Shown piece after piece: positions 36,914 to 58,589 of a DNA stretch of 64,000 nucleotides. The stretch is from positions 124,001-188,000 of IMG/VR virus record IMGVR_UViG_3300049001_000044. One strand, given 5' to 3'. The notes beneath the pieces were generated by a model. That model saw only the letters and a list, made by a program, of their open reading frames with translations. It searched no databases and had not been told where the DNA came from. Made by a program: the position numbers and the translations under genes. Position 1 is the first letter of the stretch; each line of letters begins with the position of its first letter.

Positions 36914-37372
36914 TTAGTTGTGACCGTAATCGATCTTGCTCTTCAAGATCATTTCAAGAGCCGTATGCAGTTCCATTCCTGACAGATTCTTCTTCAACCA
37001 TTTCGTTGCGAGCTGGTTAGTGAGCTTCTCGTTCTGATATATTTTGCCTGGCGACTTGACCGTCATCCATGCGTGATACGCTTCGTGAGCTGCTTGAGCC
37101 ACATCCGCTGCATCTCGACTTTGAAGATTGATAAGGTAAATGGTTCCCGGGGTATCAGCTGCGGTTAACCCCAGCTCAGCCATCCAATCCTCTACTTTCC
37201 CCTTCAGCGGAGGAGTAAAACCTGGCTCATCGCCCTGTTTAACCATGTATGCGCCGGCCTTCATGTCATCAGTATCGGTCACGACTTTATCCTGGCCCAG
37301 AATATCTTTTACGACATCTAGGGCGGTGAAGCGTGTGGGCGTTCTAGCCTCGAAAAGTTCGTGTAGTTTCAT
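36914..37372 (-). CDS. HExxH-containing protein with MKLHELFE leader
   Basis: AAHEAYHA motif. Confidence 0.7.
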   Translation of the reverse strand: MKLHELFEARTPTRFTALDVVKDILGQDKVVTDTDDMKAGAYMVKQGDEPGFTPPLKGKVEDWMAELGLTAADTPGTIYLINLQSRDAADVAQAAHEAYHAWMTVKSPGKIYQNEKLTNQLATKWLKKNLSGMELHTALEMILKSKIDYGHN

Positions 37373-37400
37373 TTTAGGAGCTCACGTAATTTCATTTTCT

Positions 37401-37673
37401 TTATCCGAATAGTTTGTTGCCGCCCTTCTTGATCCGTAGCTTCTGTGCGGTTTCAAGGTCACGACGGATGGTTGCATATCGAGTGGCTTCCTTCTTGAAG
37501 AAGTCAATTTGGTCCTGTGTGGGAGTGAACCCATCCTCCGTCTGACAACGAGCGACTTCCTGCTTAGCCAAATACTCGATGAAGTCTGAGTAGTGGTTGA
37601 CGCGCTCGTTGCTGACGAAGAAAGCCGTTCTTACCGGCTTTCCACTATCATCATGGATTTTGATCTCGTCCAT
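37401..37673 (-). CDS. Hypothetical protein (90 aa)
   Basis: ORF track; TAATG coupling. Confidence 0.7.
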   Translation of the reverse strand: MDEIKIHDDSGKPVRTAFFVSNERVNHYSDFIEYLAKQEVARCQTEDGFTPTQDQIDFFKKEATRYATIRRDLETAQKLRIKKGGNKLFG

Positions 37674-38329
37674 TACGCTTTGCGTTTGAGGATATCCTTA
37701 TCCTCGTTCTTGATGCGCTGCTCGAGGTCGGTCCAATTCATGCGACCATGATCGTGCTTTTCAATCTCTTCCAACTTAGCACGAACTTCGGCGCCGAGGG
37801 TATCGAAGATTTCGAAGAATGCGTATTTGTAGCGGTTGCCTGCCAACTTGTTGCGCTTCGCCTTCATGCGCTCACGCTTCGTAAAGATGTTCATGAAGAA
37901 CACCGCATCTGGGGCTGAGAGGTTATCGGCGAACTCATGGTCAGAAAGCCTGTCGTCGACTTCTTTATCAGTCATGAGATCATGAGGAATGTCAGATGCG
38001 TTGCCAAAGTCTGCACGACCTGCAGTTGCACCAGTCACAGTGCTCTTACGCTTATCCGGACGAACCCAACCTGGACGACCACCTTCACGGACGACACCTT
38101 CACCCAGCACTTCACCTTCTTCGTCGTCCATGTCATACACACCATACGCGCGGTCTTCGCCTGGGATGTGTGCCCAGAACATGTGCTTACCATCTTCGAC
38201 ACCGCCCTTGAAGCGAATCTTGTCGGCCTTATCAGGGTAGGCCTTCTTCACGGCATCCATCCATTCATCGCGGTCTTTGATTGTCGCCTTTTCACTGACG
38301 ATGTTTTGGAGTTCACGTAGTAGTTTCAT
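37673..38329 (-). CDS. Hypothetical protein (218 aa), probable processed head protein
   Basis: MKLLRELQNIVSE leader and internal VLGE/VVRE sites; GTAAATA motif upstream. Confidence 0.7.
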   Translation of the reverse strand: MKLLRELQNIVSEKATIKDRDEWMDAVKKAYPDKADKIRFKGGVEDGKHMFWAHIPGEDRAYGVYDMDDEEGEVLGEGVVREGGRPGWVRPDKRKSTVTGATAGRADFGNASDIPHDLMTDKEVDDRLSDHEFADNLSAPDAVFFMNIFTKRERMKAKRNKLAGNRYKYAFFEIFDTLGAEVRAKLEEIEKHDHGRMNWTDLEQRIKNEDKDILKRKA

Positions 38330-38372
38330 ATTCTTTCCTAAGATTGTTGCGGCCTATCGGCACATCCCTTAT

Positions 38373-38984
38373 TTACTTCAAGCTCTTGATAAAGGGCTCT
38401 ACCTGATCCATGAAGGTACTTTCGTTTTTGTTGAAGATGTAGAACTTTTCGCACTTGATCATGATTTCGCTGTTCGATTTCAAGCACTCTTGGAAGTGAT
38501 CGTTGTGGAACCATGCAGCGTTGTTCATGTCCTGCATTACCAGCGTGATGGCCTTCTCTGTGGCCACATCATAGTCCTGTTCACCATCGCGATTTCTTAC
38601 AACGTCGCGGTGCATCTCCATGTTGCCGGTCAGATCATGGAAGTCCGGGCTGCACAACCATTCAAACTTACCGATCGGAAAAACCACCCCTAGCTGATCA
38701 CCATAAAGTAGAGCGTTGTTGGCGCTGCCAGAAGTGAAGAGACCGTTGCGGAATGGGAACCCAAATTCCTTCTTGAAGAATTCATTGGCGCGATCATGAA
38801 GATCAGTTGGACTGTCACGAGGGCCAGTGCGCTCACGGAACGGGATGATGGCATGGTCAGGTACGTGCTGCGCTGCATGGTGAAGATACCTATCTCCCTT
38901 CAGAGAGAAGTAGTAGGCGCAGTCCTTCTTGAACTGTTCTAAGTTAAGCGGCGCGGACTCTTGGAGGTATTGCTTGAATCTCAT
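38373..38984 (-). CDS. ART-like protein, subfamily B (first Arg motif degenerate)
   Basis: MRFKQYLQE leader; PRDS...FTSGSANNALLYG...FP.G.F...SEIMI. Confidence 0.6.
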   Translation of the reverse strand: MRFKQYLQESAPLNLEQFKKDCAYYFSLKGDRYLHHAAQHVPDHAIIPFRERTGPRDSPTDLHDRANEFFKKEFGFPFRNGLFTSGSANNALLYGDQLGVVFPIGKFEWLCSPDFHDLTGNMEMHRDVVRNRDGEQDYDVATEKAITLVMQDMNNAAWFHNDHFQECLKSNSEIMIKCEKFYIFNKNESTFMDQVEPFIKSLK

Positions 38985-39700
38985 TTGTACCACCCATCGA
39001 TCTTGTGCTTGATAACGTCCGCATCCATTACATCGGAAAGGTACTTCGATTTCTGGCTGCGAATTTTTTCTGCCATGCGCTTGCCAATCGGGTTAGCGAT
39101 TGGAGCGTCGTAGAAATTGGTCATCGATGCGAACGCCTTTCTAAGCACCGCATCGGTTAGCTCACCCTCGTCATTCTTGATCTCGGCGAAGAATGAGCTG
39201 AATTCCTGCTTAAAGAATTCCTTGTTCTCCGCTGACCGCTTGTAGACTTGCTGAATGAATTCGGGATCCACATCGCGCTCTTGACGAGTTGCTGCGCGCT
39301 TAAGCGCCGTTTCAAGTGGTGTGTCAACGAACACCATGCCTACGTCATAGCCCAGCGACTTCAAAATACCAGCACGCTGAAGGATGTTTTCTGCACTGTT
39401 CGATGTACCATCAATAAGCAGTGGCAGCATACCATTCAGATAGTTGCCCAACATGCCTTTCGTGATGCGATGGGTCTGATCTTGGAATGCAATCCAGTTC
39501 ATGCTGTTGACGCGACGACCAGTCTTGAGTGTGAGGTACTCGGTGGCGATGTCGGTGTTGATGACGCGAGGTTGGATCGCACCACTGATTTTCTTCCCAG
39601 TGTACGACTTACCAGAGCCCGGAATGCCGACGACGAAGACAGCTTTGAAAATTCCGCGATCTTCGATTGATTCTGAAATGAACTCTTTGAATGAAACCAT
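38981..39700 (-). CDS. P-loop kinase (zeta-toxin / AAA_33-like) with head-targeting-like leader
   Basis: MVSFKEFISE; VGIPGSGKS, LLIDGT, ALKRAATRQER. Confidence 0.8.
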   Translation of the reverse strand: MVSFKEFISESIEDRGIFKAVFVVGIPGSGKSYTGKKISGAIQPRVINTDIATEYLTLKTGRRVNSMNWIAFQDQTHRITKGMLGNYLNGMLPLLIDGTSNSAENILQRAGILKSLGYDVGMVFVDTPLETALKRAATRQERDVDPEFIQQVYKRSAENKEFFKQEFSSFFAEIKNDEGELTDAVLRKAFASMTNFYDAPIANPIGKRMAEKIRSQKSKYLSDVMDADVIKHKIDGWYK

Positions 39701-39733
39701 GATGTTCTTTTATGATTGGGATACAGGCTCTAT

Positions 39734-41059
39734 TTACTTCATGTGAGACTGAATGTACTCAAGAGCGTCGTCAGTTAGTTCACCCATATTCAGCGAAGGC
39801 CACCGATGGAAGAAGTCTACGAACGCATTCTCAACCTTCCTGTGAACTGCATGGCCGCCCTGTCGAAGAGCATGAACAACGCCCGCAAATAGACGTGCAT
39901 CGATCGCAACACATGGACCGCTGAACCAACACTCAACATTCGTTGGTAGCTTCCGTCCGAACTCAACCATCTTTAAGTTCAGGGTGTCAGGGTGGAACAT
40001 AACAGCGGCAAGAGCTTGAAGTCCCCTTCCCTTATTCTTGCTGAGGATGTCCATCAATTCTTTCTTCGGCGTTTCTTCAAATGCATCGCACCATCTTTCA
40101 GCGAAATCGTCGGTGTTGCTGTCGATGAAGTCGTTGATAGCACTGACGCTGGCCATAGTCATTTGTTTCCCATCGCCAAGTTCCAGCCCGATATCCTCTA
40201 AGAGGTGCTCGAACTCGTCAGAGAACAAATCGACATCAATACCATCAGACCAAGACGTGACGATATCGTTGTGAATGAAGTCATCCACATTACTCACCAC
40301 CACTTTGGTGCCATCGAATGGAACGATGACCATCGGCATACCATAGCTCGCCGCTTCAGCAATGTTAGAAGAGCAGATAAGTGACTTGCTTCGCGATGGA
40401 AAATCCTTCATGCTATCAGAAATGTCCATCATCAACTGGTAGATGTTGTTCGTATCTCTTGAGGTGCGCTCGCCCTGCGATGCGTCGATCGTCATAACTG
40501 CGACGTCATGCTTGAATCCGCGGAAGAGCAGACCACCAGTCGAAATTGCTTGAAGGCCGCGTGAGCAGTGCTTGTTGAGAAGGTCAACAGCTTTCTTCAC
40601 ATCGACATACTCGACGGCCCATGGCTTGACGACCGCCTCAGTGATTGGCTTTGGCTCGCGCTCCATGATGTCGCCTGTGATCTTCTTGAAGCCATTGCGT
40701 TGGTACCATGCCTTGAGCTGTGTCTTGGTTAGATTCTTCCCCTCCCTTCCGCCTGCGTTCTTAAGCGGCTTAACAGTGAGGTCCATCTTCACCTGATGCT
40801 TGTCAGCCAGGTCGGTCAGCCACTTCATGAACTCACGAGCGTTGCCTTGGTTCTTCTCAATCGACATGATGCTACTGATGTGGATCATGCCTTGCCACTT
40901 GCTAATCTCCGCCATCATTTTGTCCTGCCAGATGGCCATACGTGGACTCCAAGGATGCGGGGTCGTTTGTTCATGATACTCTTTCATGAACGCATCGAGG
41001 CCTGGGTTCGCCTTCAAACTTATGCGAACTACCTCTGATAGGAACTGTTTGAATCTCAT
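39734..41059 (-). CDS. GNAT acetyltransferase fused to an ART-like domain
   Basis: QGNAREFM...LKAWYQRNGF (GNAT); LFRG...FPSRSKSLICSS...A..YG...VECWFSG. Confidence 0.7.
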   Translation of the reverse strand: MRFKQFLSEVVRISLKANPGLDAFMKEYHEQTTPHPWSPRMAIWQDKMMAEISKWQGMIHISSIMSIEKNQGNAREFMKWLTDLADKHQVKMDLTVKPLKNAGGREGKNLTKTQLKAWYQRNGFKKITGDIMEREPKPITEAVVKPWAVEYVDVKKAVDLLNKHCSRGLQAISTGGLLFRGFKHDVAVMTIDASQGERTSRDTNNIYQLMMDISDSMKDFPSRSKSLICSSNIAEAASYGMPMVIVPFDGTKVVVSNVDDFIHNDIVTSWSDGIDVDLFSDEFEHLLEDIGLELGDGKQMTMASVSAINDFIDSNTDDFAERWCDAFEETPKKELMDILSKNKGRGLQALAAVMFHPDTLNLKMVEFGRKLPTNVECWFSGPCVAIDARLFAGVVHALRQGGHAVHRKVENAFVDFFHRWPSLNMGELTDDALEYIQSHMK

Positions 41060-41529: not shown

Positions 41530-41540
41530 TTTCTGCTCTC

Positions 41541-42797
41541 TTATTCAAATGGCCATGGGCCCGGTTTTTCGCCGGTTTTTCTCTGTGCTTGGAACTTGGC
41601 GATCTTTTTCTTGATCATTTCCTTGGTGTTCCACAGATCGAAATTTCCTGCTGCGTATCTTGCGAACAGCGCCATGATCTTTTCAAAGGTCTCGTCGCCA
41701 CGTTTGTTGGACATAACCAACTTGTAGTACTTCTTTCGATACTCTTCAACCTCAGCCTTGTTGTCGATGGCCAATGCATATGCTTGCGCGCATCTAGATA
41801 CGGCGTTGATGACCTTGTCTTCCATGGACAGATAGTCACTACCAACGGATCTAAACTCGACGTGACTGCGCTTTAGATTGACTGAGACGTATTTACCCAG
41901 ATCGCGTCTTGATTGTAGCTGGTCAGCGGCGATTCGAGTCACGCCATTACGCATCAACCTCAGTTGCTTCTCAACGAACTCTGGATCGCGGCTAAGTGCG
42001 TCCTTCATGTTCCGGTACATTGACTCGCAGTACCTATTCGTCTCACGACCAAATTCAGCAAGTAGGTGTTCGTCACCCAGGAACAGCACCAGCTTTACCA
42101 TGTCAAGTTTGTTATGACCTTCGCCACTCACGTTAATGTGGAGCCCGCATGACGCGTTCGTCTCTGCGCCATTCTCTTTTAACCACGCGAAGACGTTCTT
42201 CAGAGCAGTTAATCCTTCGCTGATTGAGCTGTAAACAGGGCTAACCATCTCAATGCCAAAGTTGGCCTTTATGCTGTCGTCAGGTTCAAACGTCCACTTG
42301 GTCGATACCTTCGTCGCTTCGTTGTGCTCACCGAAAACAGTTGGCTCTTCTACGTTTAGGTCTTTTGCGAACTTAGCCGCAATCGCTTTAGCAGTGTTGA
42401 TGAACTCAAGGTAGGGGTCATCTGACGCTTCATCGTAACCGTGGGGCAGATCGTACCCGTAAACCTCAGCAAAGTCAGAGAATGAGAAGATGGATTTGCT
42501 GGTCATGTAGGATAAGAAGGTGGTACTAATCTGACCGCGGCTTCCCGCAAGGGATTTCCATCTTTGATAGTCATCATCTAACTTATCGAAGGCGTCATCG
42601 GACATGCTGAAGAAGTTAGCGATGACGTTTGGTGTAATGTCGTAATCAAAGCGCACACCCTTTTTACCAGTGAGTTTCTCAACGTCATCGAAGAATACTT
42701 CCAGTTCGAATCCCACTTGTAGAGGAGATGATGATGCGAAGCTCTTGAGCGCGCTAGGGCTCATCCTAACCTCGTTAAGATAATCTTTGAATTTCAT
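41541..42797 (-). CDS. Putative amidoligase (COOH-NH2 ligase type 2) with head-targeting-like leader
   Basis: GFELE, PDDSI, GIEMVSP, TNASCGLHINVS, KYVSVN, VEFR. Confidence 0.83.
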   Translation of the reverse strand: MKFKDYLNEVRMSPSALKSFASSSPLQVGFELEVFFDDVEKLTGKKGVRFDYDITPNVIANFFSMSDDAFDKLDDDYQRWKSLAGSRGQISTTFLSYMTSKSIFSFSDFAEVYGYDLPHGYDEASDDPYLEFINTAKAIAAKFAKDLNVEEPTVFGEHNEATKVSTKWTFEPDDSIKANFGIEMVSPVYSSISEGLTALKNVFAWLKENGAETNASCGLHINVSGEGHNKLDMVKLVLFLGDEHLLAEFGRETNRYCESMYRNMKDALSRDPEFVEKQLRLMRNGVTRIAADQLQSRRDLGKYVSVNLKRSHVEFRSVGSDYLSMEDKVINAVSRCAQAYALAIDNKAEVEEYRKKYYKLVMSNKRGDETFEKIMALFARYAAGNFDLWNTKEMIKKKIAKFQAQRKTGEKPGPWPFE

Positions 42798-44484: not shown

Positions 44485-44511
44485 GATTATTGTCCAGGTG
44501 GTTGTACGGTT

Positions 44512-44519
44512 TATTTATG
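44512..44519 (-). promoter_or_regulatory. Late promoter motif CATAAATA
   Basis: Directly after a UUCG terminator. Confidence 0.65.
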
Positions 44520-44535
44520 AAGCCGGACGGCGCGC

Positions 44536-44561
44536 AAAAGAAAGGGAGCCCGAAGGCTCCC
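44536..44561 (-). terminator. cUUCGg intrinsic terminator
   Basis: GGGAGCC-TTCG-GGCTCCC then TTTCTTTT. Confidence 0.8.
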
Positions 44562-44579
44562 ACGTTCAGCTAGCTTGTA

Positions 44580-44837: not shown

Positions 44838-44838
44838 A

Positions 44839-45531: not shown

Positions 45532-46392
45532 CTAAATCTCATCTGCGCTCTTGATCTGTTTCATCAACCAATCATAGCGCTCTTGACGGTTGAAGTGCGT
45601 ACCTTTCAACCCAGCCTTTTCCATCTCTTCCTGCACCATTGAATATGGGACCATGTAGTATCCGTCAGTGCGATAGAAGAGGATCTCATGACCGCTCTTC
45701 ACAGCTGCTTCCAAGTCTTCATTGTCTAGGTAGAGGGTGTCAAAGGCGTTGTGGAGAGATTGGACCAATTTGCCATAGGCGTTCTTTACCTGAGACCACA
45801 TTGCTGCGGGTGGTTGGTTGGAGATCGTCTGTAGCGTCATATCCTCACCCGCGTCATTACGATTTGCAACCCATGTTGCGGGTGTCATCTCATACGAGAT
45901 GTCTTGGAAAAGTTGACCTATGCTCCCTGCATCGGGCTTTGGAGCGTCATTCATCCTTTTAAACTCTGCCCCGATCTGTTGCATGATCTGTCCTTCTTCA
46001 TCATAGGAGTCAGTGATGTCCGTTGACCATCCATATTTGAAGTCGCCTACTGGGAAAAAGAATCCTAACTCTCCATACTCTGATGTCATGGCGGCGTTGC
46101 CTGACGCGAACACAGTTCTAGTACGCACAGATGGGACCTTGCGGGCAAGCTGATATCCTGCGTTGAAGACAAAGTTGAATGCCTTGCCAGAGTCACGAGG
46201 TGGTCGCTCAGTGGGATGAGGGGTGAACCCTGCTCTCATGTACCGTGCAGACACTCCACGAAAAATTGGAGCAGTGGGGTTGGCGTGCAAGTAGGGCTTG
46301 CATCGATACTTGATGTCCTCGCACACTTGTCGGAAGTTCAGTCCAAGTGCTGGACGATCGTCTTGTTCTAAGATGAAGTCTTTGAATCTCAT
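45532..46392 (-). CDS. ART-like protein, subfamily B
   Basis: MRFKDFILE; IFRG...PRDS...VFASG...YG...FPVGDF...HEIL. Confidence 0.65.
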   Translation of the reverse strand: MRFKDFILEQDDRPALGLNFRQVCEDIKYRCKPYLHANPTAPIFRGVSARYMRAGFTPHPTERPPRDSGKAFNFVFNAGYQLARKVPSVRTRTVFASGNAAMTSEYGELGFFFPVGDFKYGWSTDITDSYDEEGQIMQQIGAEFKRMNDAPKPDAGSIGQLFQDISYEMTPATWVANRNDAGEDMTLQTISNQPPAAMWSQVKNAYGKLVQSLHNAFDTLYLDNEDLEAAVKSGHEILFYRTDGYYMVPYSMVQEEMEKAGLKGTHFNRQERYDWLMKQIKSADEI

Positions 46393-49983: not shown

Positions 49984-50546
49984 GATGAAGCGACCTCTCT
50001 TAATTCTTGAAGTGAAATTACCGATTTTCTTCCCTTCGAGACGTTGTCAAACTTGGGAATAAATCGAAGATTAAAAATGTGGGCTAGTATTTCTGGCTCA
50101 ACACCGTTATCAAATCCGTGCTTGATAGAGTACTTATGATCAAGCTCGTAGCCCTGTCCCCATTTATCATAGTCAGGAAGAGCTGAAAGATCATTCTTTC
50201 TTGAGAGAAATGCAACCCGATTCCTATACTGAATCAACTGTTGTTTGTACTCTTCCGAGGTTTGATATTTCTCACGGAGAGCTTTGCTGATGGCCTGACC
50301 TCTCTTATTTAGATCAACCGATTTGGCAATCTTGCGGCCCCGCTTTTGCAAGCCGCTTACCCCATTCTCGTCGACAGCGGATAAGGTCTCAATGATTTTC
50401 TTCCCATGTTCTTTGAAGTAGTCAGGATTCTTAGCAAGCTTAGCCGCCTTGATCGCCTGACCTCTTCTTTGAAAACCTGTGAGACCGTCTTCTCCAACCT
50501 GAGACATCTTAGCATGCCAGTTAGCTTTGGCCGCAGGGGTTCTCAT
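49980..50546 (-). mobile_element. Free-standing HNH homing-endonuclease-like gene
   Basis: YELDHKYSIKHGF...NLRFIPKFDNVSKG HNH-type C-terminus; basic repeated N-terminus; inside the structural operon. Confidence 0.65.
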
Positions 50547-51058
50547 TTTGGCATCATCCGTTTAATAGTTGGAAGCAGTGATTGCAGGGCGTGGTGAATG
50601 TCGTAGCGATATTTGGTGAAGCGAGACAGACTGTCTTGCCCAGTAGGCCACTTCTGTTCATCACTCCACTTCTTCAGGACCTTCATACCGTCGATGTAGT
50701 CTTCAACGGCCTTTAACACCACCTCACCGTGCTTGTCCATGAACTGTTTCGCCAAGTCGTAGTGCTCATCACGTGGATCATTGTTGAAGTAGATTAGATC
50801 CGGGATCGTAGTGTTGGCTTGGTACTCCTTTGCAATAGGAGCGAGCTCAAGGCGATACCGCTTAAGTGAGTCGTTCATCTTAGCACGCAAGACCACGAGT
50901 TGATCGTCAACGTACTTCTCCAACTCTTCCTGCTTCTGGAAGGCGTTAGGGAGATCATCAGCGATTGACTGAATCTTCTTTCTGAAGTCATCACTGCGCT
51001 TCTTCTTGAAGTCATCGTCTGCGTCGATGACATTCTCAATGAATGGTTTGAATCGCAT
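50543..51058 (-). CDS. Helical protein with MRFKPFIE leader
   Basis: Start moved to ATG 51058; paralogue of next gene (YRLELAP). Confidence 0.72.
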   Translation of the reverse strand: MRFKPFIENVIDADDDFKKKRSDDFRKKIQSIADDLPNAFQKQEELEKYVDDQLVVLRAKMNDSLKRYRLELAPIAKEYQANTTIPDLIYFNNDPRDEHYDLAKQFMDKHGEVVLKAVEDYIDGMKVLKKWSDEQKWPTGQDSLSRFTKYRYDIHHALQSLLPTIKRMMPK

Positions 51059-51579
51059 CACGCACCTCTCATGTCGTTGATTGCACGCTTGACTTGATTG
51101 CGCAGCTCTCTTCTTGCGTGCTTCACCGCATCAAGCCCATGGCGTTCCTTTAAGGTCTGCAGCCAATTGAACAGGTCGTTTAGGCCTTTCTCGTACTCAT
51201 CGACTGCGGCTTTGACTTCAACATAGTGATCCTTCACGAACTTCGTCACGTCTTTATTAGGTGAACCGCTACGATGGGAGTTGTGTGCGATAAGCTGCAT
51301 GATGGTTACGTCAGAATGGAATCCACTGATGACAGGTGCCAGCTCCAACCTATACTTTTTCAGTTTCTTTTCAAACGCGACTTGGAGTTGCTCAATGCGA
51401 TCCTTGACCTTTCCGCGTTCGCGCTGTGCGTGACCGTTAGCGTGAGCTTTTTCCCGCTCTAGCTGTTGAAGGTATCCTTCCGTGTCGAAGTTCCTATCTT
51501 GAGTAGCCTTGGCACGACGCGCCTGGAATTTGTCGCGGGCGTCGATTACCGCCTCTTGAATGAAATCTTTGAATCTCAT
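51058..51579 (-). CDS. Helical protein with MRFKDFIQE leader
   Basis: VIDARDKF...KKYRLELAP shared with the downstream paralogue. Confidence 0.72.
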   Translation of the reverse strand: MRFKDFIQEAVIDARDKFQARRAKATQDRNFDTEGYLQQLEREKAHANGHAQRERGKVKDRIEQLQVAFEKKLKKYRLELAPVISGFHSDVTIMQLIAHNSHRSGSPNKDVTKFVKDHYVEVKAAVDEYEKGLNDLFNWLQTLKERHGLDAVKHARRELRNQVKRAINDMRGA

Positions 51580-53438
51580 ATTGTTTTCTTCCCAATGCTT
51601 TGCTTGGTGGAGGAGTTTAGAATCTGATGCATGGTCGGTTTAGCCGAAGTGTACTCAGTGCGACGATCTTGCTCAATGAAGATCCAACGGTTCTTCACAG
51701 CGCTGAAGCGGTGCAGTCGTGGAGCAATCTTCGTATCAGTTGGATAGTAGAGACGGAAGTATTCACCATCCTTCGACTTCGTTGGGTCAGGGAGTTGGTA
51801 GCCTTCGACGTACGGTTCACCATTCTTTGGTAGACCATCTTCGACATAGGTAGGCGCCCTTGCTTTCATCTTCACTGGCGCTGGTTGACCCTTCGCGTTT
51901 CCAGTAGGAACAGGCGGAGTCATGTGCACCATTTCAATGCTCAGTCCATCATCTGATCCGCGTTCAGGAACCGCTTTCGCTGCCGCCTTCATCGTCTCTT
52001 CGGTTACTTCCAACACAGACTCATCAATGTGACCAGCACCATCAGCAAGGATCGTGTCAGCGGTGAGATACTTCTGAGTGTCGAACGTGCCGAAGATGTC
52101 TCTCGTTTCTTGCGACGGGATTGCCTCTTGAGCTTGGAAGCGGTAGAGCACTGGCTTCCATCCAGTTGTGTAGCCAACAGACGCCCATCCAGTGTCGGTA
52201 ACTTCCAAGAACTTCTTCACAGGACGAAGGTTATGATCGTACTGCATTTCAGGAATGACCTCGATGATGTCACCGGTAACGATAGGGCGACCCATCAGTT
52301 GGACCATCACGGCATATGATACAGTGAACGAGTACTGATCGAGAATGTTCAGACCGAATTTTGACAGATCGGAGATACTGTCGTTCGTGCTATACTGCGC
52401 CTTGATTCGCAGTGGCTGCTTCGCGTAGTCACGGTCCCTGTTCTCTTGGAAGAACAAGTCTTGCACGTTATTGATGTCAGTTGGTGGGCTATCAAGAATG
52501 TCCAGCTCAAGCACTTCCCAGCTATCGGTTCCAGTGAACATCGTTGGTACGACACGAATCGCTTTCACCAACAACTCCGTCTGTAAATTCATCGTGACAG
52601 GAGATACAGACTGGACTAGGTTGAACACGCCCACTCGCTTCCAAACGTAGTTGATTGGGAAGCTAAACATGTCGCCTGTCATAAAGTCCACACCGCCACC
52701 AATCAACGTGAAGTTGACGATTGTGGAGACAAACTGTGAATTTACCGTTGCGACGCCAAGTTGCTTCATAGCACCCACGACCGGCTTCCACATAACTTGG
52801 AAGGACGTTGAGTTGATTGCCACGAGCGTCACTACGCCTGCGACCGGGTTCTGTCCTATTGCTGTTGGTGTGAGCGTGCCATTGCCAAGACCACTGAAAG
52901 TAACCTCACCAAATTCTACCTTACCATCTGCGATCTCAACTCTAACTTGCTTCGCAAAATTGAAGGCAGTGTTACCTTGCTTGATGACGACGGCGCCCAC
53001 CTTTACCCAGTTAGGTTTTGCAGGGCTATTTTCTGGCTCGTTGCCAGGCCGAGCAGTGACGATACCAAAGTCAACACCTACATAGGCTTTTCCTGCTACG
53101 TCACTACCTGCTTGGAAGCTTCGCCATGCACCGTTGTTGATGTTGGAAATTGGGAAGCCAGGTGCTGGGGTCGATGACATCAGCGTGCCTTTAGACAGCA
53201 CACTACCATCACCTTGCTCATGCACACCTAGCAGCTTGTAGATGTTGAGTGGGGCACCATTGATGTTGAGATTCTCTGCAGCGTAGGACTCCTGCAGCGC
53301 TGTTTCATTGCGAGCGCAGAGGTCTTCCTCACCAGAGATTTCCCACTCGCCCATACAAGGATTAGTGGGAACGTACGAAGGTGTATCGTCGTGTTGGGTG
53401 TTTAGGCTACCAGCCGCGTCTTCGCAAGGGTAAGTCAT
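51576..53438 (-). CDS. Neck protein (gp14-like) with large inserted domains
   Basis: N-terminal AENLNINGAPLNIYKLLG; DLFFQENRDRDY, LSKFGL, GDII, FLEVTD. Confidence 0.6.
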   Translation of the reverse strand: MTYPCEDAAGSLNTQHDDTPSYVPTNPCMGEWEISGEEDLCARNETALQESYAAENLNINGAPLNIYKLLGVHEQGDGSVLSKGTLMSSTPAPGFPISNINNGAWRSFQAGSDVAGKAYVGVDFGIVTARPGNEPENSPAKPNWVKVGAVVIKQGNTAFNFAKQVRVEIADGKVEFGEVTFSGLGNGTLTPTAIGQNPVAGVVTLVAINSTSFQVMWKPVVGAMKQLGVATVNSQFVSTIVNFTLIGGGVDFMTGDMFSFPINYVWKRVGVFNLVQSVSPVTMNLQTELLVKAIRVVPTMFTGTDSWEVLELDILDSPPTDINNVQDLFFQENRDRDYAKQPLRIKAQYSTNDSISDLSKFGLNILDQYSFTVSYAVMVQLMGRPIVTGDIIEVIPEMQYDHNLRPVKKFLEVTDTGWASVGYTTGWKPVLYRFQAQEAIPSQETRDIFGTFDTQKYLTADTILADGAGHIDESVLEVTEETMKAAAKAVPERGSDDGLSIEMVHMTPPVPTGNAKGQPAPVKMKARAPTYVEDGLPKNGEPYVEGYQLPDPTKSKDGEYFRLYYPTDTKIAPRLHRFSAVKNRWIFIEQDRRTEYTSAKPTMHQILNSSTKQSIGKKTI

Positions 53439-54277
53439 TTGTATTGCTCTAGGAATTCTTTGAATACGTCTTCACGAATGAAGAGCGCTTTACCTTCTAT
53501 CCAAGCTTCAACGCCTGGCTTCTCAGGGACGGTTGCTTTTGCAGCGATTGCCGTCGTGAGGTTATTTATCGAAGGATCAAGACAGTACTCCAGCAATTCT
53601 TCAAAGTTCGAAAACCCTTTCTTCGCCATCGTGCGAACTGCTGCTTCAATTGACACCACGTCCTGGTGACTGATTTTGACCTTGCCCGCATCGGCCTTCT
53701 CGACTAAGTCGTAAAGCATCTTCATCGTCCATCCACGAAGAGTGCCACGAATTGCTTCAGCGTCGGTGTCAGGGACGATTCCACGGTTAATCAGCTTCAT
53801 CAAGCTCATTAGGAGGCCATTGAGGGAGTTTAGTCCTGGCAAGCCAATCGATTCCTCCAGCACTGGGAATGATTTCCAGATATCGTGCGAGTTGCACTTA
53901 CCAACCTTCGCGTCATCAGCTGGGATCACGTAGAAGATGTCGCCATATCCAGACGCAATGCGATCGGTCGACGCACAAATGTAGGCGCTCTCACGGCTAG
54001 GATATGCTTCCCATTTCTTAGAAGTGGCGATGAACTTCGTGTAGTAGTTGTGAGTGTTCTTACTCACACGTTTGAAGGAGGTGGAGTCACCCAATTGGTA
54101 CTCGCCCTTGGTGCCGTCGACACCGCGCACCAAGTTTAGCTTACCATCTTTTACCCTCTTCATAACCTTAGACGCATTCGCTTTAACCCACTCCACTGCC
54201 TCATTGTAGCTGACAGCTTTTGATGATGGGACTTTTGGAAGAGCAACCTCTTCCATGATGTAGTCTTTAAACCGCAT
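53435..54277 (-). CDS. ART-like protein, subfamily A, tandem copy 6
   Basis: MRFKDYIME; LVRG...YPSRESAYICAS...YG...IPADD...VEAWIEG. Confidence 0.68.
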   Translation of the reverse strand: MRFKDYIMEEVALPKVPSSKAVSYNEAVEWVKANASKVMKRVKDGKLNLVRGVDGTKGEYQLGDSTSFKRVSKNTHNYYTKFIATSKKWEAYPSRESAYICASTDRIASGYGDIFYVIPADDAKVGKCNSHDIWKSFPVLEESIGLPGLNSLNGLLMSLMKLINRGIVPDTDAEAIRGTLRGWTMKMLYDLVEKADAGKVKISHQDVVSIEAAVRTMAKKGFSNFEELLEYCLDPSINNLTTAIAAKATVPEKPGVEAWIEGKALFIREDVFKEFLEQYK

Positions 54278-55109
54278 AGAGTTCTTCTTTCAATTGGTTG
54301 ATTAGTTTATGGGTGTGCGAACCCATGCGATCACTTTCGATGCGGATAAACACGCACTCACCGCGAATCCAAATTTCTCTAGCCTCGTTCACGCCACCGT
54401 AATCACTCGCATCAGTGTGTAAAAACTTGTTCAGGGTAGGGTCGAAAATTCGTTCGAAGAAGGCCTGAAGATCAGAGTCCTTCTTACCCCTCATGTTAAC
54501 GATGACGGCGCGAATCGTGTCTGCTTCATAATCCTGCAAAGTTCCTACCATTTCCCGTAACATGTCGGCAGTAATTTCGCTTAGCTCATTCCTGAACTGG
54601 TCAATGTTGTCAGGGTCCAGCTTGTACTTGTGGTTGGAGAGCAGTCTCACCCATCCAAAGAACTGGTTCAGATCACCAATGTCAGGGAACCCAGTGCCGC
54701 GAAGACCCTCTCTAAAGCTGTACCAGAAATCACCGTCAGGACAAATACCCATGTGTGCGTTGTCGGATGGAATGACGAGGAAGGCCTTACCATACTGCCA
54801 CGCAGTCTGCTCAAACGATGAGCAGATCCATGCTTGATCGCGACGGGGATAATCGCTCCAACGTGGTGATGAAGAGACGAGAGCGTTCGTCTCATTCGAA
54901 GTGAAGGCGGCCTTACGTTTGAACTTGCTGCTGTCGCCGACAGCATAGTCCTGTTGCAGTGGCATGCCACGGAAGATTGCGACGTCAGGATTATCGAATA
55001 GGGCGTTAGTGTACCACTTCGAGTTCTTCCTAATCCAATCGTACGCTTCCTCTTTCGAGATGGCGGTGGATTGAGGTCCACCCTCAGCAAGGTATGCTTT
55101 GAATCTCAC
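54267..55109 (-). CDS. ART-like protein, subfamily A, tandem copy 5
   Basis: MRFKAYLAE; IFRG...YPRRDQAWICSS...YG...DFW...REIWIRG. Confidence 0.68.
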   Translation of the reverse strand: MRFKAYLAEGGPQSTAISKEEAYDWIRKNSKWYTNALFDNPDVAIFRGMPLQQDYAVGDSSKFKRKAAFTSNETNALVSSSPRWSDYPRRDQAWICSSFEQTAWQYGKAFLVIPSDNAHMGICPDGDFWYSFREGLRGTGFPDIGDLNQFFGWVRLLSNHKYKLDPDNIDQFRNELSEITADMLREMVGTLQDYEADTIRAVIVNMRGKKDSDLQAFFERIFDPTLNKFLHTDASDYGGVNEAREIWIRGECVFIRIESDRMGSHTHKLINQLKEELYAV

Positions 55110-55969
55110 AGCTCCAACTCCTTACGCAGGAATTCGATGATGTCGCGATCGCTGTTGCCAGTGACCTTGATGAACGCGGCTTTACCGTTGATCCATACTT
55201 CTCGTCTGCTGTCGACGCCACGATAGTCTTCGCCCTTTGTGTGGATGAATCCATTTGCATTTGGATCGAGTGCTTTTTCCAACCATTCGTCCATGTTGTC
55301 AGCGTGCATTTTCTTCATCGACTCTACAAGAGGTCTAACAATGCGAATGTCTTGCATCGACTCCTTCAACTCTTGCTCGTTATACTTGCTGAGCGAGTGA
55401 CGAAGCTTTGTAGGATTATTCTCTGGCATCGGAGTGGAAGGGGTGTTGAGCTTGTCAATGAATCGATTAACGTCATCGACGTCAAAGAAGCCAGACCCTT
55501 TCAAACCTACCTTGTCAAAGCATGCCCAGAAGTCATACGATGGACAGACACCGATTCGTGCTGTGTCCGCAGGAATGACAAAGTACAGACTACCTTCTGC
55601 ATCAGGATCCTTTGAACTATACCCACGAAATGCATAGAGGTCTGCGCCCGACAGGGAGGTGGAGCAGATGTACGCGCTCTCACGTGGTGGGAACGACTGC
55701 CATTCAGGATAGGTTGGGATGAGCGAGTGAATGTGATTGCTGGTGTTTGCGGCTCTCCTTCTGAAGAGGCGTGAATCACCGATAGCAAAGTCATCAAAGG
55801 AATCACGCATGCCGCGATAGATTCGATTGTTGGTTTTGCTATCATCCAAAATGCTGTGGATTCCTTCCGCTGCATTCTTTTGAATCCAATCTACTATCTC
55901 TGCTGCGTGAGACGTAACGGTGAATGGCTTACGGTATTCTTGCTCTTGTAGGTATGACTTAAACCGCAT
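55106..55969 (-). CDS. ART-like protein, subfamily A, tandem copy 4
   Basis: MRFKSYLQE; IYRG...FPPRESAYICST...DFW...REVWING. Confidence 0.68.
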   Translation of the reverse strand: MRFKSYLQEQEYRKPFTVTSHAAEIVDWIQKNAAEGIHSILDDSKTNNRIYRGMRDSFDDFAIGDSRLFRRRAANTSNHIHSLIPTYPEWQSFPPRESAYICSTSLSGADLYAFRGYSSKDPDAEGSLYFVIPADTARIGVCPSYDFWACFDKVGLKGSGFFDVDDVNRFIDKLNTPSTPMPENNPTKLRHSLSKYNEQELKESMQDIRIVRPLVESMKKMHADNMDEWLEKALDPNANGFIHTKGEDYRGVDSRREVWINGKAAFIKVTGNSDRDIIEFLRKELEL

Positions 55970-56792
55970 CTTTCAAAGTCCTGATAATTTTTTCGATGTT
56001 GTGACCGTCGACCTTGATGAATGCGGCTCTACCTGCAACCCACACTTCACGATCACCAGTACGTTTGTGATAATTAGACGCCGTGGTCTGTGAGAACTTA
56101 TTTAGCTCGGGGCCAAGGACGATCTCAAGCAGGTCGTCCATGTTATCGACATCCAGATTATTCATCGCATCAACGACGGCAGTGTGGTAGACTTTCTTCA
56201 TCACATCCTTCGTCCATGATCGAAGCACATCATGCAGCTTCTCTGAATCGGTCTCAGGAAGATGGACATTCAGAGTTTCAGCGGTGGTGGTGAGGAAGGT
56301 GTTCAGGTCTGCAACGTCATTGATGTTCCAAAGGTCAGCATGAGCTAGACCTCTTTCGAACGATGGCCAGAAGTCATCACGTGGGCAGATGCCGATGTGG
56401 GCGTTATCTGCTGGGATGACTAGGAATGGATCGTAGCGTGATGAGTATTTAGCAGCAGTGTGCAAGTTGTCGGCGCAGATGTATGCGCTCTCACGACTAG
56501 GATAGTTCTTCCATCGTGGCGAAGTGGCAATGAATGAGTTGACGAAGTTTTTGGTGTTAGCCGACTTCCTCTTGAACATAGCCGAGTTACCCACTGCATA
56601 TTGAGTATCAGACGGCACGCCTCTCACGATGTAGTTGTCAGCACTTAACACATTCGTGATGTAGTGGGAGGCATGACGCTTGCACCACTCCCTAAATGGG
56701 CCGATAGGGATAGGAGCGATGACTGGTTTGTCGCTCATCCCGGCTCCTAGCACGTGGAAGTCCGACTCATTAATGAATTGCTTAAAGCGCAT
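55959..56792 (-). CDS. ART-like protein, subfamily A, tandem copy 3
   Basis: MRFKQFINE; IVRG...YPSRESAYICAD...DFW...REVWVAG. Confidence 0.68.
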   Translation of the reverse strand: MRFKQFINESDFHVLGAGMSDKPVIAPIPIGPFREWCKRHASHYITNVLSADNYIVRGVPSDTQYAVGNSAMFKRKSANTKNFVNSFIATSPRWKNYPSRESAYICADNLHTAAKYSSRYDPFLVIPADNAHIGICPRDDFWPSFERGLAHADLWNINDVADLNTFLTTTAETLNVHLPETDSEKLHDVLRSWTKDVMKKVYHTAVVDAMNNLDVDNMDDLLEIVLGPELNKFSQTTASNYHKRTGDREVWVAGRAAFIKVDGHNIEKIIRTLKDAV

Positions 56793-57687
56793 TCAGCCAC
56801 TCCCTTACTTTTTTCTCTGCTGATTCGTAATCATATTCGTCGACAAATTCACTGATCGAGATGAACGCACATGTGCCGCCAATCCATACTTCATGATCAC
56901 CTTCCACATGGAAGGTCTCGCCCTTAGTGTGAGTGAAACCAGAAGCGGCTGGATCCAGTAGGCCTTCTAAGAACGTTAGCATGGACTCACGATAGTCCAT
57001 CTTCTCGGCGATCATCTTAATCCTTCTACTGTACTCGTTATGGAAGTCGACATGAATCTTGTCCGACATGTCATGAAAGTCTTTGTTAGTATCAGGGTGA
57101 TCACCAATCATGTCTTCCAAGTCTTCACGCCAAATGCTTCTCAAAATCCTGGTAAGTTCTGCGTAGTCAGTGCTGTTGTCAATTGGTTCACCAAATCGTT
57201 GGCATATGGCGCTCAAGACTTCGTTCATCATCTCAACACCGCCACCTTTGAACATTTTATCGAACTCTTTGAAGCCGCACCAGAAGTCGAAAGCTGGAAC
57301 AACGCCAATTCCCGCATCGTCAGCAGGAATTACCAGGTAGGGGTCACCAAAGTTGTTCGCGTTATCTAGGTCAGTAGTGCATATGTAGGCGCTCTCACGC
57401 TTAGGATAGTCTTTCCATTTAGAAGAGCGGGAAACCAACAAGTTGATGAAGTTGGAAGTGTTTGCCGCCTTTCGAACGAATTTGCTCGTATCGCCTAGAC
57501 CGTATGGGTGATCTTCCCTACCCATTGAAAGACCACGCCAAATAATTGGACCACCACGAAGCAGACCAGCAACATGCGCCTTGCTATGCTGCTTAATCCA
57601 CTCAACCACTTCTTCCTTTGATGTTGGAGAAGCATGCGGGTAGCTGTACTTCTCCTCTTGTTCCTTTAGGTAATCTTTGAATCTCAT
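56782..57687 (-). CDS. ART-like protein, subfamily A, tandem copy 2
   Basis: MRFKDYLKE; IWRG...YPKRESAYICTT...FG...DFW...HEVWIGG. Confidence 0.68.
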   Translation of the reverse strand: MRFKDYLKEQEEKYSYPHASPTSKEEVVEWIKQHSKAHVAGLLRGGPIIWRGLSMGREDHPYGLGDTSKFVRKAANTSNFINLLVSRSSKWKDYPKRESAYICTTDLDNANNFGDPYLVIPADDAGIGVVPAFDFWCGFKEFDKMFKGGGVEMMNEVLSAICQRFGEPIDNSTDYAELTRILRSIWREDLEDMIGDHPDTNKDFHDMSDKIHVDFHNEYSRRIKMIAEKMDYRESMLTFLEGLLDPAASGFTHTKGETFHVEGDHEVWIGGTCAFISISEFVDEYDYESAEKKVREWLNAL

Positions 57688-58589
57688 TCTAACTCTTCTA
57701 CCCAGTCAAGTGGGTTATCGGCGTGGCCGATAACTGCTACCTCACCATGCACCCACACCTCATGGTCTCCATGAATGTCGAACTCTCTTCCATTTAAGAC
57801 TTGGAATTTGTTCGTGTATGGATCCATCGACTTGGACAGCCATTCATACAGGCTGTCTCCCATGTTCGGGCTCTGCAGGATGGTTTCACGGATGATTTTC
57901 GCCCAACGCTGGTTGTAATCGCGGGTGTGGTCAGGATGGTCGTTGTCGAACCCTTCCAACTGATTTACGAAATCGTGAAGCTTCTCGGTGGTCACATCGC
58001 TCAACACCCTTCTCATCTCGTCAAAGGTCATCTTCTGCTCATCTAACTTCAGATTCATTTCTTCTTTGATGAACTCCAGCATCGTGTTGATGGAGTCGAC
58101 GTTCTTGTGTCTGCGCTTTAGGAACGAAAAGCTGTCCCAAAAATCTGACTCAGTGCAGATTCCGATTTGCGCGCTGTCGGCAGGAATGATTAGTGCAAGG
58201 TCACCATACTGTTCCGCCTTGTGCTCGTTCGTCGTGCAGATGTATGAAGACGAACGAGGTGGGAACCGCTTCCATGCTGCGTCATTGCTCACCAACAAGT
58301 TGATGTAATTGGCAGTATAGGCTGCACGACGCTTGAGCGATCTCGAATCACCAATCAAGTACGGTGCCTCTGCCGTGAATCCACGATAGATCGGTGATGC
58401 GCTGCCATCCTTCAGCTTCTGAATGTAGCGAGAGGCGTTCTTCTTAATCCACTCCTTAACCTCATGCTCTTCGACCCGCCGCATGTTTTGAAAGTTTGGG
58501 GTGGAGATCGTCTCCTCATCGTCGTCCCATGGAAAAGTCGGTTCACCGTTGTTTCGATATTGCTCTTTGATGTAGTCTTTGAATCTCAT
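57684..58589 (-). CDS. ART-like protein, subfamily A, tandem copy 1
   Basis: MRFKDYIKE; IYRG...FPPRSSSYICTT...YG...DFW...HEVWVHG. Confidence 0.68.
   Translation of the reverse strand: MRFKDYIKEQYRNNGEPTFPWDDDEETISTPNFQNMRRVEEHEVKEWIKKNASRYIQKLKDGSASPIYRGFTAEAPYLIGDSRSLKRRAAYTANYINLLVSNDAAWKRFPPRSSSYICTTNEHKAEQYGDLALIIPADSAQIGICTESDFWDSFSFLKRRHKNVDSINTMLEFIKEEMNLKLDEQKMTFDEMRRVLSDVTTEKLHDFVNQLEGFDNDHPDHTRDYNQRWAKIIRETILQSPNMGDSLYEWLSKSMDPYTNKFQVLNGREFDIHGDHEVWVHGEVAVIGHADNPLDWVEELE

What the first reader, a model, noticed from the sequence alone, without database searches (positions are those of the whole stretch)
36914..58589. Fourteen unrelated or paralogous late proteins share a capsid-targeting-like N-terminal leader
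Seen: M(R/K)FKx(Y/F)(L/I)xE or a close variant starts the ORFs at 38984, 39700, 41059, 42797, 46392, 47168, 51058, 51579, 54277, 55109, 55969, 56792, 57687 and 58589; looser leaders at 1600, 10475, 37372 and 38329. Recognised structural and replication proteins lack it. Known: T4 internal proteins use a 10-aa CTS (IPIII MKTYQEFIAE) removed by gp21 at (I/L)xE and are ejected with the DNA. Inference: a modular address tag that loads a large enzyme cargo (ART-like, GNAT, kinase, amidoligase, HExxH protein) into the head for injection.
Basis: partly seen in the sequence, partly recalled or inferred. Interest (0 to 1): 0.82.

Follow-up and report, generated by a model that had tools for sequence, protein, structure and literature searches.

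The report
T4-like capsid-targeting leader in jumbo phage
A giant uncultured phage puts the same nine-residue tag, a close cousin of phage T4's capsid-targeting sequence, on the front of many unrelated proteins, and in a cultured relative every annotated protein with the equivalent tag is found in purified virions, so the tag probably marks what the phage packs into its particle.

Summary
M[RK]FKx[YF][LI]xE occurs 12 times in six frames, against 0.0 in codon shuffles. Every hit is on the minus strand at an ATG or GTG start. Two close variants start at 51058 and 39700.

A second, shorter leader, M[KN][LV]x[EQ]L[LF]E, starts the ORFs at 37372, 1600 and 10475.

The tag is not a by-product of paralogy. 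With the leader removed, the 14 proteins form at least four unrelated groups:
- a large family of unknown function (10 members)
- a pair of 170-aa paralogues
- an Amidoligase_2 enzyme
- a zeta-toxin/AAA_33 kinase

In IMG/VR, one codon version of the leader precedes 69 ORFs in 32 BLAST clusters.

The same genome encodes a T4 gp21-type prohead protease, a gp20-type portal and a gp23-type capsid protein. T4's own leaders are MKTYQEFIAE and MKTFKEF…; the aromatic and [IL]xE positions match.

In Agrobacterium phage Atu_ph07, all 19 annotated proteins carrying its version of the leader are in the published virion proteome (P about 1e-14).

Cleavage after the Glu, head location and injection are inferred, not shown. 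The ART-like and GNAT cargo labels are not supported. I read this as a new variant of a known kind.

The parts
57684..58589 (-). Family-A cargo gene, 301 aa, leader MRFKDYIKE
   Evidence: phrog_12810 4.9e-42
56782..57687 (-). Family-A cargo gene, 301 aa, leader MRFKDYLKE. AF2 model has pLDDT 83.5; leader residues 1-10 are low confidence and lie outside the fold
55959..56792 (-). Family-A cargo gene, 277 aa, leader MRFKQFINE
55106..55969 (-). Family-A cargo gene, 287 aa, leader MRFKSYLQE
54267..55109 (-). Family-A cargo gene, 280 aa, GTG start overlapping the upstream stop (GTGA), leader (M)RFKAYLAE
   Evidence: the JGI gene call missed this start
53435..54277 (-). Family-A cargo gene, 280 aa, leader MRFKDYIME
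51058..51579 (-). Family-B cargo gene, 173 aa, leader MRFKDFIQE; mature part basic (pI 9.8)
50543..51058 (-). Family-B paralogue, 171 aa, one-residue-shorter leader MRFKPFIE
   Evidence: E=8e-10 to 51579; the same short form occurs in L004 and L005
46389..47168 (-). Cargo gene, 259 aa, leader MRFKTFLQE (second ATG of the ORF, GGAG 7 nt upstream); distant family-A branch (phrog_11975)
45532..46392 (-). Cargo gene, 286 aa, leader MRFKDFILE; paralogue of 46389-47168
41541..42797 (-). Amidoligase_2 enzyme, 418 aa, leader MKFKDYLNE
   Evidence: Pfam PF12224 1.2e-10. Orthologues in RsoM2USA (MKLIQKLSE) and Atu_ph07 gp196 (…KKLTE); gp196 is detected in virions
39734..41059 (-). Two-domain cargo gene, 441 aa. 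Leader MRFKQFLSE at the extreme N-terminus, then an extra N-terminal domain, with the family-A domain at about residues 150-392
38981..39700 (-). Zeta-toxin/AAA_33-type P-loop kinase, 239 aa, 10-residue leader MVSFKEFISE (same length as the T4 CTS)
   Evidence: Pfam 1.3e-11 and 4.4e-10. Nearly all of the 120 homologue clusters listed carry M[IV][ST]FK[EQ]F[IL]xES or MRFKEF..ES about 24 aa before the P-loop
38373..38984 (-). Cargo gene, 203 aa, leader MRFKQYLQE (internal ATG of a GTG ORF); phrog_15932/11975
36914..37372 (-). 152-aa protein with class-2 leader MKLHELFE; bare HExxH motif at residue 96
37673..38329 (-). 218-aa protein starting MKLLRELQ, a near-miss to the class-2 leader (Gln in place of Glu); membership uncertain
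   Evidence: a similar MKLLQELQ starts a 270-aa gene next to the capsid gene
1262..1600 (-). 112-aa protein with class-2 leader MKVNELLE. Its orthologue in a related contig carries the class-1 leader MNFKTYLKE
   Evidence: (54% identity, E=2e-36, alignment begins just after the leaders)
10475..11080 (+). 201-aa basic protein with class-2 leader MNLLQLLE, outside the late cluster
58592..60445 (-). Context: T4 gp13-like neck protein, no leader
   Evidence: Pfam Phage_T4_gp13, phrog_211
47262..49121 (-). Context: tail sheath, no leader
   Evidence: 54% identity to RsoM2USA
35259..36827 (-). Context: large terminase, no leader

Best explanation
The leader is a capsid-targeting propeptide of the T4 type.

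Proposed mechanism:
- A short amphipathic N-terminal peptide binds the scaffolding core while the prohead assembles. It has a hydrophobic or aromatic residue at position 3, hydrophobic residues at 6 and 7, and Glu at 8 or 9.
- Whatever protein follows the peptide is therefore enclosed in the shell.
- The phage's gp21-family prohead protease then cuts after the Glu of the terminal [LI]-x-E.
- The mature proteins stay in the DNA-filled head and probably leave it with the DNA at infection.

Shown:
- the tag exists
- it is selected at the protein level
- it sits on unrelated proteins
- it is gained, lost and swapped between orthologues
- it matches the experimentally mapped positions of the T4 CTS
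- the same genome has a T4-type portal, protease and capsid protein
- in a cultured relative the equivalent tag picks out virion proteins without an error among annotated genes

Inferred:
- binding to the core
- cleavage after Glu
- head rather than tail location
- ejection into the host
For: 1. The tag sits on unrelated proteins.
- With the first 12 residues removed, the 14 proteins fall into at least 4 groups with no similarity to each other.
- In the 441-aa protein the tag stays at the extreme N-terminus although an extra domain precedes the family-A domain.
- One codon version of the tag finds 87 places in IMG/VR. Of these, 69 head ORFs of at least 80 aa, which form 32 BLAST clusters.
- Homologues of family A (3,466 cluster representatives) and of the kinase (120 clusters listed) carry the same leader forms, including MKTFKTFLIE.

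2. The tag is a separable module.
- A DUF6267 protein has the leader plus an acidic linker in one contig, while cyanophage homologues start directly at the conserved HLEHLEDD.
- Orthologues swap class-1 and class-2 leaders.
- Amidoligase orthologues in three phages each carry that phage's own form of the leader, ending L-x-E.

3. It matches T4.
- IPII and IPIII start MKTYQEFIAE; IPI starts MKTFKEF.
- The review PMC9026906 reports that residues 4 and 7 matter for targeting and residues 8 and 10 for processing.
- These correspond to F3, Y/F6, I/L7 and E9 here, and match exactly in MVSFKEFISE.

4. The machinery is present in the same 343-kb contig.
- Peptidase_S77, 6.9e-24
- Portal_T4, 2.7e-88
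- Gp23, 1e-92
- The protease starts MKQQLLIE, like the LIE-9 site of T4 gp21.
- Capsid proteins of the clade share a conserved LxE-TA site near residue 39.

5. Published virion proteomics agree.
- In Atu_ph07, the 19 annotated proteins whose N-terminus matches M[RKN][WLFIV]..[LI].E are all in the virion ESI-MS/MS table (PMC6102473, Table S5).
- They are gp43, gp53-63, gp381, gp407, gp408, gp482, gp548, gp561 and gp672, in 7 unrelated groups.
- The background is 140 of 714 proteins, giving a hypergeometric P of 1.3e-14.
- The 8 proteins not used to define the pattern are 8 of 8.
- The Atu_ph07 amidoligase orthologue gp196 is also detected.
Against: - There is no direct evidence for this phage; it is known only as a metagenomic contig.
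- Nothing shows cleavage. The Atu_ph07 data are tryptic identifications, and removal of 8 residues is invisible on a gel.
- Virion association does not prove a head location.
- The pattern used for Atu_ph07 was written after seeing 11 of the 19 proteins.
- Most mature cargo here is acidic to neutral, unlike the basic T4 internal proteins.
- Codons 2 and 4 are strongly biased to AGA and AAA against the genome's usage, so some nucleotide-level or translational constraint also acts on these bases.
- A homologue of the T4 scaffold gp22 was not identified by Pfam.
Confidence: 0.8

Rival explanations
1. The shared N-terminus is only the conserved start of one expanded paralogous family and has no function as a tag.
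For: Ten of the 14 proteins belong to one superfamily, six of them in tandem.
Against: - The amidoligase, the kinase and the 170-aa pair share nothing but the leader with that family.
- In IMG/VR the leader heads 32 unrelated clusters.
- The leader is 70% identical between paralogues and the body 31%.
- The leader is present or absent on homologues of DUF6267.
Confidence: 0.02
2. The conserved element acts at the nucleotide level. It could be a translation-initiation enhancer (A-rich early codons), an RNA signal, or a recombination site that shuffles gene cassettes. On this view the peptide is incidental.
For: - AGA is used for Arg2 in 8 of 12 leaders against 11% in gene bodies.
- AAA is used for Lys4 in 10 of 13 against 29%.
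- Many of these genes are translationally coupled, with overlapping stop and start codons.
Against: - Synonymous codons from different codon families are used (AGA and CGN; CTA, ATC, ATT and CTT), and the upstream sequence is not conserved.
- Other forms of the leader differ in DNA but keep the hydrophobic pattern and the terminal [LI]xE.
- The peptide pattern predicts virion proteins in Atu_ph07.
Confidence: 0.05
3. The tag directs proteins into the particle, but they serve as structural or scaffold-like internal material (an inner body or DNA-packing aid) or as tail and neck accessories. They are not effectors delivered to the host.
For: - Six paralogues lie between neck genes.
- Family A has no recognisable catalytic fold.
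- The 170-aa pair looks helical and charged.
- PhiKZ-like giant phages hold large internal protein masses (PMC5694885).
Against: - At least two cargo proteins are enzymes: an amidoligase and a zeta-like kinase. A structural role for these is unlikely.
- A terminal [LI]xE only makes sense for substrates of a protease that works inside the prohead.
- Further paralogues are scattered away from the neck genes.
- In Atu_ph07 the array is far from the neck genes.
Confidence: 0.13

Closest known systems
Capsid targeting sequence (CTS) of phage T4 internal proteins IPI, IPII, IPIII and Alt (Mullaney and Black 1996; reviewed in PMC9026906)
   Same: - It sits at the extreme N-terminus and is 8-10 residues long.
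- It has aromatic or hydrophobic residues spaced i, i+3, i+4.
- It ends in [IL]-x-E, the cleavage motif of the gp21 protease.
- It is found on otherwise unrelated proteins.
- The genome has a gp20, gp21 and gp23-type head.
- MVSFKEFISE and MKTFKTFLIE are near-copies of T4 MKTYQEFIAE and MKTFKEF.
   Different: - The main form is one residue shorter (MRFKxYIxE).
- A second form, MKLxELFE, coexists in the same genome.
- There are many more tagged genes: at least 19 class-1 and about 8 class-2 in the roughly 110 kb of this genome that could be read.
- The cargo is mostly 20-50 kDa and acidic to neutral, and includes enzymes and a huge paralogous family.
- The host phage is a 343-kb jumbo phage that shares only the core head genes with T4.
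- Function has not been tested.
N-terminal propeptides of ejection and inner-head proteins of phiKZ-like giant phages (SPN3US, phiKZ; PMC5694885, PMC10052503)
   Same: They occur on head-internal proteins of giant phages, are removed by a gp21-related protease at x-x-E motifs, and are thought to target proteins to the prohead.
   Different: Those propeptides are mostly longer than 100 residues and are not a shared short consensus. The lineage and cleavage motif ((S/A/G)-x-E) also differ.
MuF-fused and polyvalent head-packaged effectors (Iyer et al., PMC9503650, PMC7824862)
   Same: They provide a way to load enzymes into the head for delivery with the DNA, and the cargo is diverse and fast-evolving.
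   Different: Loading is by fusion to a structural domain, not by a short cleavable peptide. Neither survey mentions an N-terminal leader in jumbo phages.
Encapsulin cargo-loading peptides (own knowledge, not tested here)
   Same: A short portable peptide directs unrelated enzymes into an HK97-fold shell.
   Different: The peptide is C-terminal, is not cleaved, binds the shell protein directly, and no DNA or injection is involved.

Membership tests
T4-type capsid targeting sequence (CTS) | Located at the extreme N-terminus, starting at Met1 | tested here: met
   All 12 strict hits and both variants lie on start codons. In the two-domain protein the leader remains at the N-terminus.
T4-type capsid targeting sequence (CTS) | About 10 residues, with the positions important for targeting (T4 residues 4 and 7, aromatic) and for processing (8 and 10, I and E) conserved | tested here: met
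   T4 has MKTYQEFIAE; the positions are from PMC9026906. Here they are F3, Y/F6, I/L7 and E9. MVSFKEFISE is in the same register as T4.
T4-type capsid targeting sequence (CTS) | Portable: present on proteins unrelated to each other | tested here: met
   At least 4 groups in the window, 32 clusters in IMG/VR, 7 groups in Atu_ph07.
T4-type capsid targeting sequence (CTS) | Genome encodes a gp21-family prohead protease and a T4-type head | tested here: met
   Peptidase_S77 6.9e-24, Portal_T4 2.7e-88 and Gp23 1e-92 on the same contig.
T4-type capsid targeting sequence (CTS) | A gp22-type scaffolding core to which the CTS binds | tested here: inconclusive
   A 290-aa gene sits in the gp22 position just upstream of the capsid gene, but it has no Pfam match; only phrog_10922 of unknown function.
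T4-type capsid targeting sequence (CTS) | Tagged proteins are found in the virion | tested here: met
   Not testable for this uncultured phage. In the relative Atu_ph07, 19 of 19 annotated leader proteins are in the published virion proteome.
T4-type capsid targeting sequence (CTS) | Leader removed by cleavage after the Glu | not testable with these tools
   Needs semi-specific mass spectrometry or N-terminal sequencing of virion proteins.
T4-type capsid targeting sequence (CTS) | Leader alone is sufficient to package a foreign protein | not testable with these tools
   Needs reporter fusions in a cultured relative.
ADP-ribosyltransferase superfamily (claimed for the 277-301-aa paralogues) | Recognisable ART fold or family match | tested here: not met
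   - No Pfam hit at E up to 10 in 16 members.
- No hit in a PDB profile search.
- Foldseek against the PDB gave nothing below E=1, from a model of pLDDT 83.5.
- BFVD matches are only uncharacterised jumbo-phage proteins.
- The atlas gave only weak leads, to DUF2441 and a Tse2 ART.
GNAT acetyltransferase (claimed cargo) | Pfam Acetyltransf match on a leader-bearing protein | tested here: not met
   No leader protein has such a match. The genome's GNAT lies about 2 kb beyond the window end and starts VIVQITYAE, without a leader.

The most novel reading that the evidence does not exclude
The leader may be a readable address code shared by a very large clade of T4-superfamily phages, from ordinary T4-likes to 350-490-kb jumbo phages. 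If so, it lists each phage's whole packaged and injected protein set directly from sequence.

On this reading, dozens of unknown families would be a reservoir of first-minute host-takeover or anti-defence effectors. One of them, family A, has more than 3,000 sequence clusters.

The coexistence of two or more leader forms in one genome (MRFKxYLxE and MKLxELFE) would be a sorting code for different copy numbers, core layers or fates.
Probability: 0.3. Interest if true: 0.85.

Novelty: new variant of a known kind. Interest (0 to 1): 0.68.

Why it matters
If the tag works as in T4, the packaged proteome of uncultured jumbo phages can be predicted with a regular expression. In Atu_ph07 the pattern picked out 19 of 19 annotated virion proteins, including isolated genes scattered over 490 kb.

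That would point directly at the proteins a phage brings into the cell before any gene is expressed. This is the class in which anti-restriction and host-takeover factors such as T4 IPI and Alt were found.

It also marks a very large, wholly uncharacterised virion protein family, together with a conserved amidoligase and zeta-like kinase, as priority targets.

Finally, it offers a ready-made short tag for loading foreign proteins into large phage capsids.

In the literature I could search, short CTS-type leaders are described only for T4 and its close relatives. Giant phages are described as using long propeptides.

Tried and rejected
- **Near-identity DNA search** of the late region against GenBank phages found no match. 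The phage is known only as a metagenomic contig.
I used the commonest codon version instead, so the IMG/VR count is a lower bound.
- **ART-like fold for family A** was rejected after Pfam, a PDB profile search and Foldseek.
- **Pfam on ten IMG/VR cargo proteins** named only DUF6267.
- **RsoM2USA virion data** cover only ten excised gel bands and say nothing either way about ORFs 403-405.
- **XacN1** has no detectable family-A homologue, so its proteome was not used.
- **Head module in the window**: it is absent there, and I found it about 23 kb beyond the window's high-coordinate end on the same contig.
- **Walking the rest of the 343-kb contig** was not attempted, so the genome-wide count of tagged genes is incomplete.
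- **Nucleotide-level explanation** was considered and largely rejected on codon evidence, apart from the AGA/AAA bias.

Full report
**What is there.** The window is positions 124,001-188,000 of a 343,229-bp metagenomic phage contig (JGI Ga0494384_0000001, also IMGVR_UViG_3300049001_000044). It has no close relative among GenBank phages. Protein similarity places it with jumbo myoviruses: its sheath is 54% identical to that of Ralstonia phage RsoM2USA, then come XacN1 and PA5oct. The cited region is a minus-strand late cluster with T4-like neck and tail genes: gp13-like, gp15-like, sheath, tube and large terminase.

- The pattern .[RK]FK.[YF][LIM].E occurs 12 times in six frames. Every hit is on the minus strand and on a start codon.
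- One hundred codon shuffles never produced a hit.
- Two variants start at 51058 (MRFKPFIE) and 39700 (MVSFKEFISE).
- Structural and replication proteins lack the leader.

**Selection is on the peptide.** Arg2 is written AGA, CGC, CGG or CGA. Other positions also use synonymous codons, and the upstream 30 nt are unrelated. Among the six tandem paralogues the leader is 70% identical and the rest 31%. There is one caveat: AGA and AAA are far commoner in the leader than in gene bodies. An additional translational constraint on the first codons is therefore likely.

**It is a module, not a family signature.**
- With the leader removed, ten of the fourteen proteins belong to one superfamily of unknown function, which I call family A. 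These are the six tandem genes, the C-terminal half of the 441-aa protein, and the more distant 259-, 286- and 203-aa proteins.
- Two more are a pair of 170-aa paralogues.
- One is an Amidoligase_2 enzyme and one a zeta-toxin/AAA_33 kinase.
- Scanning IMG/VR with only the commonest codon version of the leader found 87 places. Of these, 69 head ORFs of at least 80 aa, which form 32 BLAST clusters.
- A profile of family A finds 3,466 cluster representatives. Their N-termini fall into three forms: MRFKxFLxE, M[ITV][ST]FKxF[LI]xE and MKLxxLxE. In 126 of 151 there is a hydrophobic-x-E ending within residues 7-13.
- Nearly all kinase homologues listed carry the same leader forms about 24 residues before the P-loop.

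**The leader is gained, lost and exchanged.**
- A DUF6267 protein has the leader plus an acidic linker in one contig. Cyanophage homologues begin directly at the conserved core.
- The 112-aa protein at 1262-1600 starts MKVNELLE. Its 54%-identical orthologue elsewhere starts MNFKTYLKE.
- Amidoligase orthologues start MKFKDYLNE here, MKLIQKLSE in RsoM2USA and MRWQDISSKKLTE in Atu_ph07. In all three the next residues are [VL][RK]M.

**A second leader form.** The looser leaders at 37372, 1600 and 10475 fit M[KN][LV]x[EQ]L[LF]E. This gives 3 hits against 0.01 expected, all at ORF starts. More occur elsewhere in the genome, next to the capsid gene and in another cluster. The start at 38329 is only a near-miss. 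Both forms share a hydrophobic residue at position 3, hydrophobic residues at 6 and 7, and a terminal [LI]-x-E.

**Link to T4.**
- On the T4 record, IPII and IPIII start MKTYQEFIAE and IPI starts MKTFKEFTST.
- The review PMC9026906 reports that the first 10 residues of IPIII suffice for packaging. Residues 4 and 7 matter for targeting and residues 8 and 10 for processing by gp21. T4 gp21 itself has an LIE-9 site.
- The leaders here keep exactly those positions. MVSFKEFISE is in the same register as T4, and the main form is one residue shorter.
- The same contig encodes a Peptidase_S77 (gp21-family) protease, a T4-type portal and a gp23-type capsid protein.
- That protease begins MKQQLLIE. Capsid proteins across the clade share a conserved LxE-TA site near residue 39, just before the Gp23 domain.
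- The AlphaFold model of one family-A protein (pLDDT 83.5) leaves residues 1-10 as a low-confidence appendage outside the fold.

**Experimental support from a relative.**
- Agrobacterium phage Atu_ph07 has family-A homologues (E=2e-19) in a tandem array whose members start M[RK]WxQLxE.
- I read the whole record and scanned it for M[RKN][WLFIV]..[LI].E.
- Two hits are internal to genes and one is an unannotated ORF. The remaining 19 hits are N-termini of annotated proteins: gp43, gp53-63, gp381, gp407, gp408, gp482, gp548, gp561 and gp672.
- I identified these both by their ordinal position in the record and by molecular weight. All 19 are listed in the published virion ESI-MS/MS table (Attai et al. 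2018, PMC6102473, Table S5).
- The table has 140 rows for 714 proteins, so the hypergeometric P is 1.3e-14. The eight proteins not used to write the pattern are eight of eight.
- The 19 fall into seven unrelated groups.
- The amidoligase orthologue gp196 is also detected, with 14 peptides.
- Atu_ph07 also has a gp21 homologue (Table S3).

**What is not shown.** No data exist for the window's own phage. Cleavage after Glu, binding to a scaffold, head location and ejection are inferences from T4. A gp22 homologue was not recognised.

**Status of the claimed cargo.**
- Kinase and amidoligase: supported.
- ART-like: not supported (weak atlas leads only).
- GNAT: not supported; the only GNAT is outside the window and has no leader.
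- HExxH: a bare motif only.

**Comparison with what is known.** I would file this as a T4-type CTS in a new setting.
- The searchable literature describes such short leaders only for T4 and close relatives.
- The same literature contrasts them with the long propeptides of phiKZ-like giant phages.
- Two broad surveys of jumbo phages and of packaged NAD-utilising enzymes do not mention a leader.
- The differences from T4 are a shorter main form, coexisting leader forms, a much larger and mostly non-basic cargo that includes enzymes, and spread through a very large clade.

**Verdict.** I rate it a new variant of a known kind, with interest 0.68.

Noticed in passing
window 42794-43321 (-): A 175-aa protein with a TnsA-like endonuclease N-terminal domain (Pfam 9.9e-22) sits between the second tail-tube-like gene and the amidoligase cargo gene. 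It has no leader. It may be a mobile or homing insertion in the late cluster.
   Followed up: no
window 43321-44484 (-) and 44839-45429 (-): There are two tail-tube-like genes side by side. The 196-aa tube matches phrog_4542 at 2.2e-44. A 387-aa relative matches at 7.6e-10.
   Followed up: no
leader codons 2 and 4 of the 14 genes, e.g. window 58578-58586: Arg2 is AGA in 8 of 12 leaders against 11% in gene bodies. Lys4 is AAA in 10 of 13 against 29%. This A-rich codon bias points to a translational or nucleotide-level constraint on top of the peptide.
   Followed up: partly
L016:6873-7487 and L016:10001-11218 (same contig, outside the window): The prohead protease begins MKQQLLIE, resembling the LIE-9 site of T4 gp21. 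The major capsid protein begins MELFENW, resembling the class-2 leader. Across 24 related contigs the capsid proteins share a conserved [YH]LxE-TA site near residue 39, a likely maturation cleavage site.
   Followed up: partly
L125:2434-5335 and L147:2507-5208 (same contig, outside the window): More tagged genes lie elsewhere in the genome. L125 has three tandem genes starting MRFKQYLME, MRFKTYLTE and MINFKTFLL. L147 has a cluster starting MRLKEYLKE, MRFKDYLGE, MKLIQLFE and MKVTELFE.
   Followed up: partly
IMG/VR loci L096, L131, L162; L099, L145; L105, L165; L111, L167: The leader is followed within 9-17 codons by a stop (MRFKKFILEEG*, MRFKIFLNEKFIL*, MRFKDFFMEAK*, MRFKYFLGEIPFSYIIV*). Each form recurs on two or three contigs. 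They could be truncated genes, a different genetic code, or leader-only peptides.
   Followed up: no
Atu_ph07 gp53 (L170:14975-17311) versus window 38981-39700: In Atu_ph07 a family-A domain and a zeta-toxin kinase domain appear to be fused in one 778-aa virion protein: BFVD names it 'Zeta toxin domain-containing protein', and it matches the family-A model. In the window they are separate tagged genes. This suggests the two work together.
   Followed up: no
window 54267-55109 (-): The JGI gene call starts this gene at an internal ATG (232 aa) and misses the GTG start that carries the leader. A second assembly's call gives the 280-aa form.
   Followed up: yes
window 47373-49055 (+): A 560-aa ORF runs antisense to the tail sheath gene. 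It is almost certainly a shadow ORF.
   Followed up: no
Atu_ph07 record 315248-315526 (-): An unannotated 92-aa ORF starts MRLFDLFE. It is a likely missed gene for a packaged protein, and it could not be in the mass-spectrometry search database.
   Followed up: no
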